From: Perkinsus chesapeaki ATCC PRA-425
Lineage: Eukaryota > Protista > Perkinsozoa
Direction of reading: 5' to 3'
Assembly (NCBI GenBank): GCA_013115145.1
Contig: JAAPAO010000001.1
Span: forward strand, 1-64,000
DNA: 64,000 nucleotides
The notes below the pieces were generated by a model that ran no database searches, was not told the DNA's origin, and worked only from the letters and a program-made list of their open reading frames with translations. Numbering within the stretch: the stretch's first letter is position 1; each line of letters begins with the position of its first letter. This document shows positions 9,591 through 16,794 of this stretch, one piece after another. The translations under genes were made by a program, and so were the position numbers.

Positions 9591-12049
9591 ATGTCTTCTT
9601 CTGGACCTACCACTGCCACACAGCAGACCGCTTCTAATAAGGGAGATATCCGTTTGGATAATTCGAAGACTCGCGACGTTCGTGCATCAAACATTATAGC
9701 GGCCAAAGCAGTAGCAGATGCAGTGAGGACTAGTCTTGGCCCTAGGGGTACTAAGATATTTTGAAACTTAACTTGGGCTCGCCTTGTTAAAATAACACAT
9801 ATTGCGCAGAATTGACGTGCCGTCGTACAGCGTTCGGAAATGCTTTCACTCAGGCATGGACAAGATGATCCAAGATGGATCTGGCGAAGTGGTCATCACT
9901 AACGATGGTGCTACTATTCTCAAGGAGGTGGGATAATAATAGTAACCGACGAAGAGTTATTGGGTTACTCAGATGTCTGTCCTCCATCCCACCGCTAAGA
10001 TGCTTGTTGAGCTTTCAAAGAGCCAAGATATCGAAGCCGGAGATGGTATTAGGCTGCCGTCGAACTTGTCATCATCCTCGTAGGTACGACTTCTGTCGTT
10101 GTTATTGCTGGTGCCCTGCTCGGTGCTGCCCAGAATGTAAGGAACAATAGGAGCTGTTGTTAGAACGCCACCCCACCTTAGCTTTTGGAACGTGGTATTC
10201 ACCCTAATACGATCAGCGATGGTTTCCTATTGGCCGCTCACAAGGCTGAGACCATATTGGAGGATATGAGTATACCTATCAGTCTGGATGACAGGGAGAG
10301 CCTTATTACCAGTGCCAGTAGGGGGATGACAAACTCATCAACGATTTAATGGCATACATGTTGGCAGGCACCTCTCTCAACTCGAAGGTTGTCGCTCAGT
10401 CCGCAAGCCTTCTCGCTCCTATGGCCGTCGATGCGGTAGGCTCTTACCTGCCAATACTTCTCATACCATATTCCGGTTGGATCAGGTTATGAAGGTGGCC
10501 GAGATGCCCGAAGACCCCAAGCAAGGCGGCACCGTCGATCTCAACGATGTGAGGGAATATTCTCAGAAATCGGATTTATGTATCCATCATAGGTTCGTAT
10601 TTGCCGTAAGCTCGGTGGTACTATCGATGACTCTGAGCTGGTCGACGGTCTGGTAATGAGCCAGAAGGTTGCCAAGGTTGCTGGAGGTATGCGTCAGTGG
10701 TGGGGTGGTTCGATGGGGACGGGTTTACGGCTCAGGCCCCACCAAGGTGGAGAACGCTAAAATTGGATTGATCCAGTTCTGCTTGTCGCCGCCTAAGACT
10801 GATATGGAGAACAGCGTTACTGTTAACGATTATGCTCAAATGGACCGTAATACAAGGTCGAACCTAATGGGGGGGAGCTAGTTGGTGGCAGGCATTCTTA
10901 GAGAGGAGCGAGTTCAATTGGCTAAGATGGTTAAGCACATTGCTAAGACCGGGTGCAACGTAAGAGCAACGACAGCTGCTGCTGCTGTTGGAAAGGCGGT
11001 GGCCTTTTTAGGTTTTATTGGTCCAAAAGTCTATCCTCCGTGACGCCGTCACAAACCTCAGTCTAGACTTCTGTGCTAAGGCGAAGATCCTTGTGGTAGG
11101 TCAAGGCTGCTGATGAGGTTGTTGTATCGGGAAGGGTGGTCGCTGGTAGGTGAGGGACGTCGAGCGCGATGACATCGACTATCTCTCGCGTATCCTGGGT
11201 TGTGAGCCTGTTGCCAGCCTAAACGAATTCACTAAGGACAAGCTTGGTGAGGCTAAGTTGGTGTAAGTGTGGCATTTGTGGGAGACATTGATTGTGAAGT
11301 GGTCTACTGTAGCCGCGAAGAGCCCCTCGGATCTGGTCTCGGTACCATCATCCGATTCACTGGCCTACCGAAGCTCAATACGTCCAAATGCGTATCGATT
11401 TTGTTAAGAGGAACCAATCAATTGGTAGTAGTATGGCATAAGTTGCTGAAAAGCCCTCTGTTGTATTAGACTCTCGACGAGGCCGAGAGATCCCTCCACG
11501 ATGCCCTGTGTGTGGTTCGATCCCTTGTGAAGAAGCCAGCCGTCCTCCCTGGTGGTGGAAGTGTTGAGATGGAGCTTAGTGTAGGCTTGGTTGACATTAC
11601 CAGCAGCTATGATTCAAGTATCTTAGGTACGATTAAGTCAATGGACCAGACGTGAATTGAAGGGCGTTGAGGCCTACTGTGTCCGAGCCTTCGCTGAAGC
11701 TCTCGAGATCATCCCCTACACTCTAGCCGAGAATGCAGGTTTGGCACCGGTGGAGATTGTCACTCAATTACGTAATAATGGCGGGAATGCATTTAGTCTG
11801 CAGCAGTAATGTGGCAGGTGCCGCTCATGCTGACGGGTCCAAGTTCGCCGGTATTGATGTAAGAAAGGGCAAGGTAGAGAAGGACATGGCTAAGAATTTA
11901 AAGGTAAGATTAAATGCCTTACCCGAGGATCGAACCTGGATCTGTTATAGGTCCTACAGCCTTTGTTGGTATCGTTGAGCGCCATCCGTGGTGCTTCGGA
12001 GACCGTCCGAATGATCCTTAAGATAGATGATCTGGTATACACTCGTTAA
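9591..12049 (+). CDS. CCT4: T-complex protein 1 subunit delta (CCT4), 16 introns
   Basis: [100 protein letters not shown]. The spliced frame is continuous through 16 GT-AG introns. Confidence 0.97.
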
Positions 12050-12373: not shown

Positions 12374-15300
12374 ATGAGCAATCGTTATTATCAGATGAGG
12401 GCATCTCATGAGGAGCTGGGAACATCTAATCCCGGTCATGAGGGCAATACGAAGGGATCAGCGCTGCCACCGCCACTAAAAAGAAGGAGTAATAACCGCA
12501 GGCCATGGCTGATGTTAACTTGGCGACGAGCGCTGCTACCGATGCTAGTGGTTGTATGCCTCATTGGCCTTACTATTAATCATCCTAATTCTGTGGACTT
12601 AGTGGTATCTGGGGCTATGGTAAAAGCTCAGGACATCAGTTTGGCTGAAGAGGAGGAGGAGGAGGAGGAAGAAGAAGTTGATGATAGGAATAATAACATC
12701 GAGGTGGTTGCAGATGATGATGATGCGAAGGAGGATGAAGAAAGGTATGGTTACTGTGAAGCTCAGGGCCTGGAGGATGCTGGGGATGGCACTTGCAAGA
12801 ATCCGGATGTTTTAACGATCATCCGACGCCAACAGAAGGACCCTTCCTCCGACTCTTCTACCGAATCGACGTCGTCATCATCATCAAGCTCCTCCTCCGC
12901 CTCCTCTTCGTCTGCATCATCATCTGAGACTGGCTCAAGCTCGCTACCTAACCCTTTTGAATCTAAGGAGATGATGGACATTTTTAAGGACACTACAGAC
13001 TTTGTGGTATCTTTAGTTGATGGCAGGCTTATAGCCTTTGATGGTTGTGGTACTAAACTTTGGACATATACAGCCAAGTCACCAACGGTAGAGGCGCGCT
13101 TTAATGAAACTGCGGCTAAGGGCCTTGGAAGTGGTGATTGGGCCAGTCATTTTGCCGCGGATGATCCTACTAGAACACCGAGGATTGTGCCGGCGCTTGA
13201 TGGGACAGTATATATAGTCACACCCAATCCTCAGTCGCCGAGTCAGATAGTGTTTACGCACCTACCAACACTTCTGGAGGACATGGTCAGCGTTGCTCCC
13301 TTCTATAGCCCAGCATTTCCGGGGATGTATGTTACTGGTAGCAAGCTGCAAGGCGGCACTACAGTTGATTTCTCCAAGGTGGAATGGCACATACCATCGG
13401 GGCCATTGCCGAGGTATATGAAGAAGAACAAGCTTGTATTTGCCAGGCAGGAGTGGGCATTACATTCGCTGGCGGCCGAGGATTCGGAGGAGGTATGGCG
13501 GGCCAGTTACGCGGAGTTCCCTCCCGTCACGCATGAGCACCTGTTCGCTGGGACAGAGGTGAATGCCAGAGCTAGAGCACTGACTAGTGTCATTGGGATA
13601 TTGGATAATCAAACGAGTGTATATAAGAAGATAGCGGATCACAACAGATGTCCGACAATTCGACGGGCAGTAGAGGAGGGGCAGGCTTTGGACGAACCAT
13701 TAAAGCTGGTCTTTGACTCTCCTGTGGTAGGAGTATTTGCTGTTGTTAACCCTCAAGATACTCCAGCGAAGTTGGGTATGGTACCAGTGGCACACGCTGG
13801 TCCGTGGTGCCATGAGGTAATAAAGGGGGATTGCGGCTATCCTGACTGGGTGGTGTTGGCTCGTGGATAGTAGAACATGTTGGTAGTGTATTCCTGTGTC
13901 TTGTATAGAATTATCATATTCTCATAATAGTCATAGTGCCGAGTCGGGTCGTAGGCTGCCAGCTCGGCCTTTGATAGGTGTGCTGAGATGGTGTATTTAG
14001 TGGCTTTAGTTATCTTATATAGGGTAACCGATTCCCTGTAGTCTATAATAGTACTTGTGGCCTTTTATGAGATTATCATTTCGTAGTTGTTTTTCAGTTC
14101 CCTGGCTATGATAAGTTAACAATACCGTCATATGTTAACATGCCCCACGCCTATGATGGCAGACCACAGCTTTATCCACCATTCACCTATAACGACGGCC
14201 AAAGGGGGCGTCATCCTAGGGGCTCCGTCAAGGACGAGCAGCCTTACTATATGTACAAAAACAGACGGAGGAGTCCAGAGCCACTGCAGCTGGCACTGGA
14301 AGGAGGGGTTACTCTGGATGAGATGGCAAGTATTTTTATAAAGCTCAACGGTCCGAACCGGCTTTTCTTCGGGGGCCTGGGCGGCGACTACGATATGGGC
14401 GGCGGACCAGGCGGCCCGGGCGGTGGTCGTGCTGCTCCCCCGGGCCATGGATCATTTGGACAGCTTCCCGACGGCGGGGCTAACTACCATGATGAGTATA
14501 AAATTAGGCCTTTAAGTTTACCAGGCCCTGGTGGAAGCTACACGACCGTGGACCCAGCGAAGGTGCATTATCTCAATGACGTGGCGCGTAACACTTCTCT
14601 TCGAGAGTTCCTAGCCGTGAAGTATCAACATAACTACATAGTGCTGATCTTCCTCCTGGGTCTCATGGGCTTCGGCGCTGTGGTGTATCGGTTCATAGCT
14701 GGCTGGGTGCAGGTGTTTAAAGTGGTGGCCCCGGACGGAGAGGGTATGTCCCCTGGACTTGGACAGGATGATGATGAGATGAGTGAAGACGAGGAGATGG
14801 AGGATGGTGAAGATGATGCGGAGGACTCTGATTTCCTGTCTGCGGCGGCATCGATGGATTTGATAGAGCAACCGTATGACATGGGCAAGTTGTTGGATAT
14901 CAAGCAGGATATAATGTATATACCGGAATGGCAGGACATACTGCTGCAGACAAGTCTTAATAAGAGACTTCAGCAGTTCAACGATCTCACTAGAATAGCC
15001 TTCAAACACGGTGAGAGCGATGTCCGAACGCTTCATGGCGGAGTGCTGTTCCTTGGTCGCAATGTCGATGATCCGCAGTTCATCTTCCGCAACCCCAAGC
15101 AGGAGCTCAGTCAGAGGCCTAACGTACCCAAATACACTCAGGCGGTTAGGAACGCTGTTGCTGGAAATGCTATGAAGGAAGTGCGCTATTTGAAGGCCTA
15201 CTGCCCGAAGGCATGTGTGGCGAGTTGGAACACCTTCGAGGGGGTCATACAGGACTTTGTATGCAAGCATCCGACGGATTCACACGTCAGCTGCCGAGAC

Positions 15301-16794
15301 GTCGACCCAGAAGTTGCCAGAGATGCATCATTGATCATTATGGCATTGAGAGATACTGATGCTCATGAGGATAATATGATGAGAGATAAGCTTGGCAGGA
15401 TAGCTCTGTTCGACCTTGGGTGCGCACTGGCCGATAGACCATTGCCGAGGGACGACATGACCCAGGAGTACCTGGACAACTTTGCCTTCTGGCACCAGAC
15501 TCCACTGGTATTGGACGCCCCATTCACGTCTCAGCAAATCCGCTATCTGAAGTCCCTTGACTTTGAGAAGTTACGGAAGATCTGGTCCCACTTCAACTAC
15601 CCCGGCTACGTTGTGGCGGAGTGCGAGCGAGCTAGGCGGCGTGGAAGGCTGAGAAGATCTTCGCGAGGTCGGTCTAGGTCAGCACACACCAGATCCCATA
15701 GCACTAGCAGCCCGGGTGTGGTCCGCCAGGCTTTGGGATATTTAGTCAGTCCTCGGGCGGCTGGCAACACCAATTCGGAGGTGGAATCTGGCGGCAGTCC
15801 CACAGCAGCAACTCAACGACCACTGCTGCCTCTGGTGCTTCCTCAGCGAGTGGCTGGTCGGCGACCTCAGCCGTCGCAAGACGACCGTGGGAGCGATCGG
15901 GCGTCGTCCTCACCGAGCCCACCTGGGACGAGAGAGGGCTCTGAAGGGGAGACTGATAATGCTACGTCAAGTGGCGAGGAGGCCACTGTGCCGAGGAAGC
16001 CGGGATCGAATCGAAGGAGGGCGAGGGCAGAGACGTTTGCGGTGGCAAAAGTGTCAAGAGAATATGAACCGAGCAGCAACGAAAGCTGCAATCATAACGA
16101 TCATGATGAGACCACCGATGAAGAGTCTGTTGGAGACTACGATGAAGTAAGGATGGTACCAACAGTTGACATGGTCAATGTTATGGAGGCTAATGTAAGA
16201 TTCCTTTTGAGATGTGCGGAGACCGACAAGCCTATGCTGTTCGCTGCAGAGGTGAGCCTTCGCTTGTACTGTGGATGTGCTGTATGTAGTGTGGTTCAGG
16301 TTATGTATAGTGGCCTCTACGAGAGGGTATGGCATGACCTTCCGGGTGGGGTCACAGACTTTGAGAGCCTTGGTGACACGCTTGTCGACATTGCCAGCGT
16401 TGAATCAGTTTATGATATCTTCACGGATTGGGATGATAGAAGGACTGGCCACCGTCATGTTGATATGTTATGGGCCGGCCCACCGAGGCCTCTGCCTCTC
16501 TGCAATGGTCATCGTAATGGCGATGCCACCGACACCAGCTCCGACAAGCTCCTCTCCCCTGCCGACGAATCCATGTCGTGCCGTAGCGGTTCTGTGGCCT
16601 CGCGGTTCGACGGGGAAATTGAGATGGTTGGGTTCGACGATGACAATACAAGTGTTGAGATGGGGACGGCGGCTTCGGTAGCCAGCGGACGACCAGGTGG
16701 TGATGGTGTTACTACTAGTGAGAGCGAGGAAGGTGAAGCGAAGAAAAAGACGAAGAAAAATGTTACCATTAGAATCGGTAATACATTCACTTAA
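12374..16794 (+). CDS. Membrane protein: PERK/IRE1-like luminal domain + TM + type-II PI4-kinase-like domain
   Basis: N-terminal hydrophobic segment; luminal motifs VSLVDGRLIAFD..KLW, IVPALDG.VY, LVFARQEWALHSL..EEVW; TM helix YIVLIFLLGLMGFGAVVYRFIAGW; kinase motifs GVIQDF, DTDAHEDN, ALFDLGCAL, APFTSQQIRYLKSLD. The two long ORFs join in phase through introns 13800-13908, 13948-14000 and 14024-14097. Confidence 0.75.

What the first reader, a model, noticed from the sequence alone, without database searches (positions are those of the whole stretch)
12374..16794. PERK/IRE1-type luminal stress-sensor domain fused to a type-II PI4-kinase-like domain: a possible new ER-stress signalling output
Seen: a luminal region with motifs in the order and spacing of PERK/IRE1 luminal domains (VSLVDGRLIAFD..KLW vs ISTLDGRIAALD..KQW; IVPALDG vs IIPSLDG; LVFARQEW..VWRASYAEF vs LLLQRTQK..KWNFSVGHF). 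One TM helix follows, then a cytosolic domain resembling plant PI4K-gamma/Lsb6 type-II kinases (GVIQDF vs GSLQxF; DTDAHEDN vs NADRHAGN; FDLGCAL vs IDHGYCL; PFTSQQIRYLKSLD vs PYSAETIEYIKSLD). There is no ePK-fold kinase or RNase domain. A phase-consistent three-intron path joins the two ORFs (linker ELSYSHNSHSAES-VALVILYR-FPGY). Established: this luminal domain is known coupled to eIF2-alpha kinase (PERK) or kinase-RNase (IRE1); plant PI4K-gamma members can act as protein kinases. Inference: unfolded-protein load could be read out as phosphoinositide or atypical protein phosphorylation, an undescribed UPR-like branch.
Basis: partly seen in the sequence, partly recalled or inferred. Interest (0 to 1): 0.86.

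Follow-up and report, generated by a model that had tools for sequence, protein, structure and literature searches.

The report
PERK-type stress sensor joined to lipid-kinase-like domain
This Perkinsus gene joins the ER-lumen sensor domain known from the stress kinases PERK and IRE1, through one membrane helix, to a cytosolic domain folded like a type II phosphatidylinositol 4-kinase; this pairing has not been described, and it may be a new way for a cell to report protein-folding stress.

Summary
The gene model needs correcting.

- **One gene.** 12374-16794 (+) encodes about 1363 aa with two introns: 13817-14097 (281 nt) and 16252-16299 (48 nt, in frame).
- **Evidence for the junction.** The P. 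olseni orthologue has the same junction with a 67-nt intron. Uncultured relatives carry both domains in one uninterrupted ORF.
- **Luminal domain (12971-13816).** This is a true IRE1/PERK luminal domain. All 15 significant Foldseek PDB hits are IRE1 or PERK luminal domains. VIA Z is 7.6-9.2, against 4.5 for generic propellers. A family-only profile reaches PERK-type eIF2alpha kinases of other myzozoans at E down to 1e-21.
- **Cytosolic domain (14866-16443).** No Pfam or PDB sequence search reaches significance. Its model matches every type II PI4K structure at Z 17.5-18.4, with the next fold at Z 9. Plant PI4K-gamma proteins are the best AlphaFold DB matches.
- **Catalytic residues.** The catalytic Asp, the Asn and the DxG Asp are invariant. 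No N-lobe Lys is conserved; an invariant Arg lies in the predicted beta-3 strand.
- **Distribution.** The family is small, about a dozen 50% clusters in 1.8 billion proteins. It appears confined to Perkinsus and environmental relatives.
- **Not shown.** Function, substrate and ER location are all inferred. No RNA data were available.

The parts
12374..16794 (+). Whole gene: three exons, two introns, about 1363 aa. Start is at 12374 or at the in-frame Met at 12512.
   Evidence: Spliced CDS is 4092 nt, in frame, with a single terminal stop. Orthologous P. olseni models P0001 and P0016 are 73-74% identical.
12512..12577 (+). N-terminal hydrophobic segment (MLTWRRALLPMLVVVCLIGLTI): a signal peptide if translation starts at 12512, or a signal anchor if it starts at 12374.
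   Evidence: Hydropathy peak of 1.88. The P. olseni orthologue starts with a classical Leu-rich signal peptide at the equivalent place.
12611..12970 (+). Low-complexity luminal spacer with poly-Glu/Asp and poly-Ser tracts.
   Evidence: Translation. The tracts are partly conserved in P. olseni and absent from the environmental homologues.
12971..13816 (+). PERK/IRE1-type luminal (sensor) domain, aa 200-481.
   Evidence: AF2 model has pLDDT 73 and pTM 0.74. The top 15 Foldseek PDB hits are all IRE1/PERK luminal domains, E 3e-9 to 7e-4. VIA Z is 7.6-9.2 against 4.5 for the next fold. Profile hits reach PERK-type kinases at E 1e-21 to 1e-8. dN is 0.11 with dS saturated against P. olseni.
13817..14097 (+). 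Intron 1: 281 nt, GTAATA...TTTTTCAG, phase 0, with stops in the exon-1 frame.
   Evidence: The P. olseni junction is CHE|FPGY with a 67-nt intron joining different frames. DNA similarity is absent between 13819 and 14082.
14098..14631 (+). Luminal juxtamembrane region, aa 482-659, Gly/Pro-rich. The 14 codons before the ORF2 ATG (FPGYDKLTIPSYVN) are coding.
   Evidence: Conserved with P. olseni at protein level. It aligns to the ...P.PT.FGG.P segment of intron-free homologues.
14632..14709 (+). Single transmembrane helix, aa 660-685.
   Evidence: Hydropathy 2.21. A TM segment lies at the equivalent place in nearly all family members scanned, with basic residues on the C-terminal side in the sequences read.
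14866..15609 (+). Type II PI4K-like kinase-fold domain: N-lobe, catalytic loop and first C-lobe helices (aa 738-985).
   Evidence: Model of the P. olseni orthologue has core pLDDT 80-98. VIA Z is 17.5-18.4 to all PI4KII alpha/beta entries, next Z 9. Plant PI4K-gamma 1-8 and Lsb6 are top in AFDB Swiss-Prot. Atlas search agrees. dN is 0.069 with dS saturated.
15043..15129 (+). Gly-loop-like LGRNVD hairpin and predicted beta-3 strand IFRNPKQE. An invariant Arg lies where type II PI4Ks are inferred to have the ATP-binding Lys.
   Evidence: Invariant columns G86 R87 N88 V89 D90 ... F96 R97 N98 P99 E102, with no invariant Lys anywhere in the N-lobe. Strands E63-67 and E75-78 in the model.
15346..15447 (+). 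Catalytic loop (R-D-T-D-A-H-x-x-N) and metal-binding D-L-G, invariant in the whole family.
   Evidence: Invariant columns. The only PDB hits of this segment's profile are PI4KIII beta/alpha, with DAHxGN aligned on DRHxGN and DLG on DFG, at weak E about 1.3.
15610..16146 (+). Arg/Ser/Pro-rich disordered insertion in the C-lobe, aa 986-1164.
   Evidence: pLDDT below 50 in the model. Only 48% identical to P. olseni, dN/dS 0.17. Absent from the 800-aa environmental homologues; a shorter one is present in the P0002/P0003/P0005 group.
16147..16251 (+). C-terminal helices of the kinase-like domain, first part (end of exon 2).
   Evidence: Conserved columns R451...A483. Helices H436-468 pack in the model at pLDDT above 90 and lie inside the VIA alignment to PI4KII.
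16252..16299 (+). Intron 2: 48 nt, GTGAGC...GGTTCAG, in frame and without a stop, so it reads through in the raw ORF.
   Evidence: The 16-residue insertion is present only in the window ORF, in a column block that is gapped in all 15 other sequences. Sequence shown. P. olseni has an intron at the same codon. DNA similarity ends at 16253.
16300..16443 (+). Last conserved helices of the kinase-like domain (VMYSGLYERVW...).
   Evidence: Invariant G505 Y507 W511 L528. Helices H471-514 in the model.
16444..16794 (+). Low-complexity C-terminal tail and stop codon.
   Evidence: Translation. Only loosely conserved with P. olseni.

Best explanation
SHOWN. This is one gene for a single-pass membrane protein. 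It has an N-terminal signal sequence, an extracytoplasmic domain homologous to the luminal sensor domain of PERK/IRE1 (closest to the PERK-type eIF2alpha kinases of other myzozoans), one TM helix, and a cytosolic domain with the type II PI4-kinase fold. The architecture is conserved and under purifying selection in Perkinsus and in a small set of uncultured relatives. The kinase-like domain keeps the catalytic Asp, the Asn and the DxG Asp, but has Ala for the Arg of DRH and no conserved N-lobe Lys.

INFERRED. By analogy with PERK and IRE1, the protein sits in the ER. Its luminal domain dimerises or oligomerises when unfolded protein accumulates or BiP leaves. That clustering switches on the cytosolic domains, which then phosphorylate either phosphatidylinositol (local PI4P on the ER) or proteins, as plant PI4K-gamma enzymes do in vitro. 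It most likely arose in the perkinsozoan lineage when the sensor half of a PERK-like kinase was recombined with a divergent type II PI4K-like module. That module also exists behind a different, unrelated ectodomain.
For: One gene: P. olseni models join the two halves. The junction CHE|FPGY is the same in both species, with introns of different length, 281 against 67 nt. At least eleven distinct environmental homologues of about 800-865 aa carry both domains in one uninterrupted ORF. Luminal domain: Foldseek, VIA, family-only HMM against 1.84 billion proteins hitting PERK-like kinases and IRE1 (P0056, P0071), PERK top in the PDB sequence search, and a tree placing the family on the PERK side of a 98/98 split from IRE1. 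Kinase fold. Catalytic motifs. Topology: signal peptide, TM helix and basic residues after the TM. Selection: dN 0.07-0.11 with saturated dS. Protein-kinase activity of plant PI4K-gamma is cited in PMC3823935.
Against: There is no RNA evidence: no run holds the locus. ER residence, unfolded-protein or BiP binding, and oligomerisation are untested. No sequence method places the cytosolic domain in PI3_PI4_kinase. The ATP-binding Lys is not conserved, and K152A kills human PI4KII alpha (PMC3974213). The palmitoylation/PI-pocket insertion of PI4KII alpha is missing. No mechanism is known by which dimerisation activates a type II PI4K. The same output domain behind an unrelated ectodomain shows the module is not tied to a PERK-type sensor.
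Confidence: 0.6

Rival explanations
1. The architecture is the same, but the cytosolic domain is a pseudokinase or non-canonical enzyme. The sensor would then signal by scaffolding, by binding phosphoinositide or nucleotide, or through another nucleotide-dependent chemistry, and not by ordinary phosphotransfer.
For: No invariant Lys anywhere in the N-lobe, and an invariant Arg in the predicted beta-3 strand. DRH is changed to DAH in all members. Pfam PI3_PI4_kinase does not recognise the domain. K152A inactivates PI4KII alpha.
Against: The catalytic Asp, the Asn and the DxG Asp are invariant in every member over deep divergence. Pseudokinases usually lose these residues. dN in the core is very low.
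Confidence: 0.2
2. The protein is a real receptor-type kinase but not an ER-stress sensor. The PERK-like ectodomain would have been reused as a ligand- or partner-binding domain in another compartment such as the Golgi, endosomes or the plasma membrane, where type II PI4Ks normally act.
For: Type II PI4Ks are Golgi/endosome enzymes (established knowledge). No ER-retention signal was seen in the sequence. A sister group uses a different ectodomain with the same output. Identity to PERK/IRE1 luminal domains is only 11-19%.
Against: Every characterised protein with this luminal fold is an ER stress sensor. The closest relatives are PERK-type eIF2alpha kinases.
Confidence: 0.17
3. These are two separate genes, a secreted or luminal PERK-like protein and a TM-anchored kinase-like protein, that merely lie next to each other.
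For: No transcript data are available. ORF2 has its own ATG at 14140.
Against: The 14 codons upstream of that ATG are conserved as protein in P. olseni. The splice junction is conserved across species. Intron-free homologues have both halves in one ORF. ORF1 read through ends in stops only 18 codons past the donor.
Confidence: 0.03

Closest known systems
PERK / EIF2AK3 and the myzozoan PERK-type eIF2alpha kinases (hits from Digyalum, Polykrikos, Vitrella and Babesia)
   Same: It shares a homologous luminal domain; these are the closest relatives by HMM, E 1e-21 to 1e-8, and they fall on the same side of the tree split. It also shares the signal peptide, luminal domain, single TM helix and cytosolic catalytic domain layout.
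   Different: The cytosolic part is not an ePK eIF2alpha kinase. It is a type II PI4K-fold domain, and no Pkinase match exists.
IRE1 (human IRE1 alpha/beta, yeast Ire1)
   Same: The luminal fold is the same: 6SHC is the top Foldseek hit at E 3e-9, and VIA Z is 8.6-9.2. The overall topology is the same.
   Different: There is no kinase-RNase module. The luminal domain groups with the PERK side and not with IRE1.
Type II PI 4-kinases (human PI4KII alpha/beta, yeast Lsb6, plant PI4K-gamma 1-8)
   Same: The fold matches over about 250 residues at 3.4 A, Z about 18. The catalytic loop D..N and the DxG are conserved. Plant PI4K-gamma proteins are the best AFDB matches.
   Different: No significant sequence-level match exists. 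It has Arg instead of the inferred ATP-binding Lys, and DAH instead of DRH. It lacks the CCPCC palmitoylation insertion and is anchored by a TM helix behind a luminal sensor. It carries a long disordered C-lobe insertion.
Receptor-lipid-kinase fusions such as the transmembrane (7TM) PIPKs of ciliates
   Same: The principle is the same: a membrane-receptor-like part fused to a phosphoinositide-kinase-family domain in protists (PMC3823935).
   Different: Both the sensor (7TM) and the kinase family (PIPK) are different, and there is no homology to this protein.

Membership tests
IRE1/PERK luminal-domain superfamily | The three-dimensional fold of the IRE1/PERK luminal domain, distinct from complete PQQ/BamB/EMC1 propellers | tested here: met
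   The top 15 Foldseek hits are all IRE1/PERK luminal domains with probability 1.0. BamB, methanol dehydrogenase and EMC1 score E above 0.015 with probability below 0.25. VIA Z is 7.6-9.2 against 4.5. The model has only medium confidence (pLDDT 73).
IRE1/PERK luminal-domain superfamily | Sequence homology detectable by profile search | tested here: met
   The family-only profile hits the N-terminal regions of PERK-like kinases at E 2.6e-21 to 1e-8 and of IRE1 proteins at 1.5e-5 and 8.8e-4. PERK luminal-domain chains are the top PDB hits at E 0.024.
IRE1/PERK luminal-domain superfamily | Extracytoplasmic position: signal sequence before the domain, single TM helix after it | tested here: met
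   Hydropathy and sequence inspection only. No experimental topology exists.
IRE1/PERK luminal-domain superfamily | Stress-dependent dimerisation/oligomerisation, and binding of unfolded protein or BiP | not testable with these tools
   At 11-19% identity to solved luminal domains, interface residues cannot be mapped with confidence.
PERK (eIF2alpha kinase) or IRE1 (kinase-RNase) proper | Cytosolic ePK kinase domain, plus the KEN RNase domain for IRE1 | tested here: not met
   No Pkinase or Ribonuc_2-5A match in either ORF at E up to 1. The cytosolic domain has the type II PI4K fold. It is therefore neither a PERK nor an IRE1.
Type II PI 4-kinase family | Kinase fold of PI4KII alpha/beta | tested here: met
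   VIA Z is 17.5-18.4 for all nine PI4KII entries, with 248-254 residues aligned at 3.4-3.6 A. The next folds are CtkA/HipT at Z 9 and PI4KIII/VPS34 at Z 7-8. Searches agree. The model is of the P. olseni orthologue, which is 89% identical in the core.
Type II PI 4-kinase family | Recognition by the family's sequence profile (Pfam PF00454 PI3_PI4_kinase) | tested here: not met
   No Pfam hit for the window protein or for any of 16 family members at E up to 10. No PI4KII hit in the PDB profile search. UniRef labels the P. olseni orthologue 'PI3K/PI4K catalytic domain-containing'.
Type II PI 4-kinase family | Catalytic-loop Asp and Asn, and the metal-binding Asp of DxG | tested here: met
   R-D-T-D-A-H-x-x-N and D-L-G are invariant in 23 sequences. 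They align on DRHxGN and DFG of PI4KIII beta/alpha (weak E).
Type II PI 4-kinase family | ATP-binding Lys in beta-3 (K152 of PI4KII alpha; K152A is inactive, PMC3974213) | tested here: not met
   No invariant Lys exists in the N-lobe, and an invariant Arg lies in the predicted beta-3 strand. The residue-level equivalence to K152 is inferred from strand order.
Type II PI 4-kinase family | Palmitoylated CCPCC insertion that forms part of the PI pocket (animal and yeast members) | tested here: not met
   There is no Cys-rich motif and only a short segment between beta-3 and the next helix. The feature is described in PMC3974213.
Type II PI 4-kinase family | PI 4-kinase activity | not testable with these tools
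   This needs an enzyme assay.

The most novel reading that the evidence does not exclude
Perkinsozoa have an extra, lineage-specific branch of the unfolded-protein response. In it, a PERK-type luminal sensor drives a type II PI4K-like domain, so that folding stress in the ER is written directly into membrane phosphoinositide (PI4P on the ER) or into atypical protein phosphorylation, and not into eIF2alpha phosphorylation or mRNA splicing.
Probability: 0.3. Interest if true: 0.9.

Novelty: new variant of a known kind. Interest (0 to 1): 0.72.

Why it matters
As far as I know and could find in the literature, the IRE1/PERK luminal domain has only been seen wired to two outputs: an eIF2alpha kinase, or a kinase-RNase. 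Here the same sensor is joined to a third, unrelated output, and the pairing has been kept under purifying selection across a protist clade.

If the sensor still reads folding stress, this would be a direct link between ER proteostasis and phosphoinositide or atypical-kinase signalling. It would also be a natural experiment on how modular the UPR sensors are.

The kinase-like module is itself a deep, previously unrecognised branch of the type II PI4K fold, with Arg in place of the ATP-binding Lys. Perkinsus is an oyster parasite that can be cultured and transfected, so the idea can be tested.

Tried and rejected
- **RNA evidence.** The run search found no run holding the locus. Laying the two listed same-species runs gave zero contigs, so splicing rests on comparative evidence only.
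Rejected.
- **Pfam on both ORFs and on family members.** Nothing for the kinase-like domain, and only sub-threshold PQQ_2 for the luminal domain.
- **PDB sequence-profile search with the cytosolic domain.** No kinase hit. A catalytic-loop-only profile gave just four weak PI4KIII hits.
- **Generic PQQ/BamB/EMC1 propeller reading of the luminal domain.** Rejected on fold-search gaps. The high scores of designed 'Cake' proteins come from summing a repeated single-blade match, with no stretch passing on its own, and were disregarded.
- **Alternative ectodomain as a decayed PERK-like domain.** Tested on the P0002/P0003/P0005 group: hhalign probability is 1% and there is no atlas lead.
- **Literature.** Searches for this architecture or for Perkinsus PI4K/UPR found nothing relevant.
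- **Earlier scan notes.** Nothing on IRE1/PERK in this genome.
Full report
**What is there**

The + strand carries two long ORFs, 12374-13870 (498 aa) and 14140-16794 (884 aa). Neither has any Pfam domain above threshold. In particular there is no protein kinase or RNase domain. The best named relative of both ORFs is a single Perkinsus olseni protein, KAF4679415 (P0001), at 73-74% identity. The window is therefore from a Perkinsus-like organism other than P. olseni.

**Gene model**

- **Junction.** P. olseni models join ...GPWCHE directly to FPGYD.... In the window this is one intron, 13817-14097: 281 nt, GTAATA...TTTTTCAG, phase 0, with stops soon after the donor in the exon-1 frame.
- **Cross-species check.** I fetched the P. 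olseni DNA (L003). Similarity to the window runs to 13819, vanishes, and resumes at 14082. The P. olseni intron at the same codon boundary is only 67 nt and joins two different frames.
That leaves no room for the two micro-exons, so the three-intron path is rejected. The 14 codons before the ORF2 ATG are conserved as protein, so exon 2 starts at 14098.
- **Second intron.** 16252-16299 (48 nt, GTGAGC...TTCAG) is in frame and stop-free. It shows up as a 16-residue insertion unique to the raw window ORF, in an otherwise invariant block. P. olseni has an intron at the same codon.
- **Product.** The spliced product is 1363 aa.
- **RNA evidence.** None could be obtained. No run holds the locus, and the two same-species runs gave nothing.

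**Independent proof of the fusion**

At least eleven distinct environmental proteins of about 800-865 aa (P0004, P0006-P0015) carry the same N-terminal domain, a TM segment at the equivalent place in nearly all of them, and the same C-terminal domain. They were called on intron-poor contigs of uncultured eukaryotes. P0013 was confirmed to translate as one uninterrupted ORF from its contig.

The conserved neighbour gene on those contigs (ATAD3) has Perkinsus as its nearest named relative, at 61-63%. Dinoflagellates, chromerids and apicomplexans come next. These are therefore probably uncultured perkinsozoans or close kin.

**Luminal domain (12971-13816, aa 200-481)**

- **PDB sequence search.** A profile of the family alone puts PERK luminal-domain chains at the top of the PDB (E 0.024).
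- **Fold search.** The AlphaFold2 model (pLDDT 73, pTM 0.74) gives 15 Foldseek hits with E of 7e-4 or better. All have probability 1.0, and every one is an IRE1 or PERK luminal domain. BamB, methanol dehydrogenase and EMC1 follow at E above 0.015 and probability below 0.25.
- **Second look.** VIA-align gives Z 7.6-9.2 for all eight IRE1/PERK entries and 4.5 for the next fold.
- **Exhaustive profile search.** The full-length family profile was searched against 1.84 billion representatives. Its luminal part hit proteins of 800-1750 aa at E 2.6e-21 to 1e-8. Nearly all of those scanned have a C-terminal Pkinase domain, usually matched as two stretches, and no RNase domain.
- **What those hits are.** The kinase of one of them (P0041) is most like HRI, PERK, PKR and GCN2. 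The named ones come from Digyalum, Polykrikos, Vitrella and Babesia, the last annotated as an eIF2alpha kinase. True IRE1 proteins are hit more weakly, at 1.5e-5 and 8.8e-4.
- **Tree.** The family and the PERK-like proteins lie on one side of a 98/98 split from the IRE1-type domains. The family itself is one group with 86/89 support. Sampling was limited to search hits, and several branches are long.

**Cytosolic domain (14866-16443, interrupted by a disordered insertion at 15610-16146 and by intron 2)**

Sequence methods fail here. There is no Pfam hit for any of 16 members and no kinase in a PDB profile search. No hit outside the family appeared in the exhaustive search: only about a dozen 50%-identity clusters carry this domain.

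The window's own ORF contains the unspliced intron 2, and spliced sequences cannot be submitted to the prediction tool. I therefore modelled the correctly spliced P. olseni orthologue (P0016:530-1045, 89% identical in the core), with the window sequence in the alignment. Results:

- The core is confident, at pLDDT 80-98.
- Foldseek puts PI4KII alpha first, at E 8e-4.
- VIA-align gives Z 17.5-18.4 for all nine PI4KII alpha/beta entries, with about 250 residues at 3.4-3.6 A spanning both sides of the insertion. CtkA/HipT score Z 9 and PI4KIII beta/VPS34 score Z 7-8.
- In AlphaFold DB Swiss-Prot the top nine hits are plant PI4K-gamma 1-8, with yeast Lsb6 also on the list.
- The ESM Atlas agrees.

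**Catalytic residues**

R-D-T-D-A-H-x-x-N and D-L-G are invariant in all 23 sequences. A profile of just this segment finds only PI4KIII beta and PI4KIII alpha in the whole PDB. It aligns DAHxGN on DRHxGN and DLG on DFG. The E-value is about 1.3, so this is a consistency check and not proof.

Against ordinary catalysis:

- No Lys is invariant anywhere in the N-lobe, and an invariant Arg lies in the predicted beta-3 strand (F-R-N-P). In human PI4KII alpha, K152A is inactive (PMC3974213). The equivalence of that Arg to K152 is my inference from strand order.
- The CCPCC palmitoylation insertion, which lines the PI pocket of PI4KII alpha, is absent.

**Topology and selection**

P. olseni starts with a classical signal peptide, and the window has an equivalent hydrophobic segment at 12512-12577. 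One strong TM helix lies at 14632-14709, and basic residues follow it in the window protein and in the other members I read. This puts the PERK-like domain outside the cytosol and the kinase-like domain inside.

Against P. olseni, dN is 0.11 for the luminal domain and 0.069 for the kinase core, with synonymous sites saturated. The insertion evolves much faster.

**How it probably works (inference)**

By homology, the luminal domain should dimerise or oligomerise when unfolded protein accumulates or BiP leaves. This would bring the cytosolic domains together. The output would be phosphorylation of PI or of proteins. Plant PI4K-gamma members show protein-kinase activity in vitro (cited in PMC3823935).

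The main rivals are a pseudokinase or scaffold output, because of the Lys-to-Arg and DRH-to-DAH changes, and a receptor role unrelated to ER stress in another compartment. A sister group (P0002, P0003, P0005, P0033, P0034) puts the same output domain behind a different Cys-containing ectodomain. That ectodomain is unrelated to the PERK-like domain (hhalign probability 1%) and of unknown fold. The kinase-like module is therefore a general receptor output in this lineage.

**Novelty**

Literature searches found no description of this architecture, and nothing on Perkinsus UPR sensors or PI4Ks. UniRef names one P. olseni orthologue 'PI3K/PI4K catalytic domain-containing'; no source name mentions the luminal domain, and the other models are unnamed or called hypothetical.

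I file it as a new variant of a known kind: a PERK/IRE1-type transmembrane sensor with a third kind of output domain. It is not a member of the PERK or IRE1 families, because it lacks an ePK domain. It is only a structural outlier of the type II PI4K family, not a profile-level member.

Noticed in passing
window 16252-16299: A 48-nt in-frame, stop-free intron that raw ORF reading translates as 16 extra residues inside a conserved helix region. One P. olseni model (P0020) also retains its counterpart as coding sequence.
   Followed up: yes
P0002, P0003, P0005, P0033, P0034 (L001:3001-5415 for P0005): A sister group has the same TM segment and PI4KII-like output domain behind a different, Cys-containing ectodomain of about 250 aa. 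That ectodomain has no detectable relative (hhalign probability 1% against the PERK-like domain; atlas scores 0.75 or lower).
   Followed up: partly
window 15628-15760 and the aligned columns of P0002/P0003/P0005 (alignment A2, columns 301-360): Inside the disordered C-lobe insertion, a short motif (basic run, then SP....G.L.SPR/K) is shared between Perkinsus and the alternative-ectodomain group. It is missing from the 800-aa homologues. It may be a phospho-regulatory site.
   Followed up: no
window 13817-14097 versus L003:3862-3928: The orthologous intron is 281 nt in the window species but 67 nt in P. olseni.
   Followed up: yes
window 10882-11978 (+): Short ORFs just upstream look like exons of a CCT/TCP-1 chaperonin subunit. 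A Cpn60_TCP1 gene also lies near the orthologue in P. olseni (L003:9063-9732), but on the other side of the gene.
   Followed up: no
L002:6968-15074 and the P0006 contig: In the environmental relatives the gene sits in a conserved block: mannitol dehydrogenase, LUC7, this gene, a small ORF, then ATAD3. This is not the window's neighbourhood.
   Followed up: no
window 12640-12687 and 12875-12925: Poly-Glu and poly-Ser coding tracts lie in the luminal spacer before the sensor domain. The read-laying tool flagged the first as a repeat.
   Followed up: no
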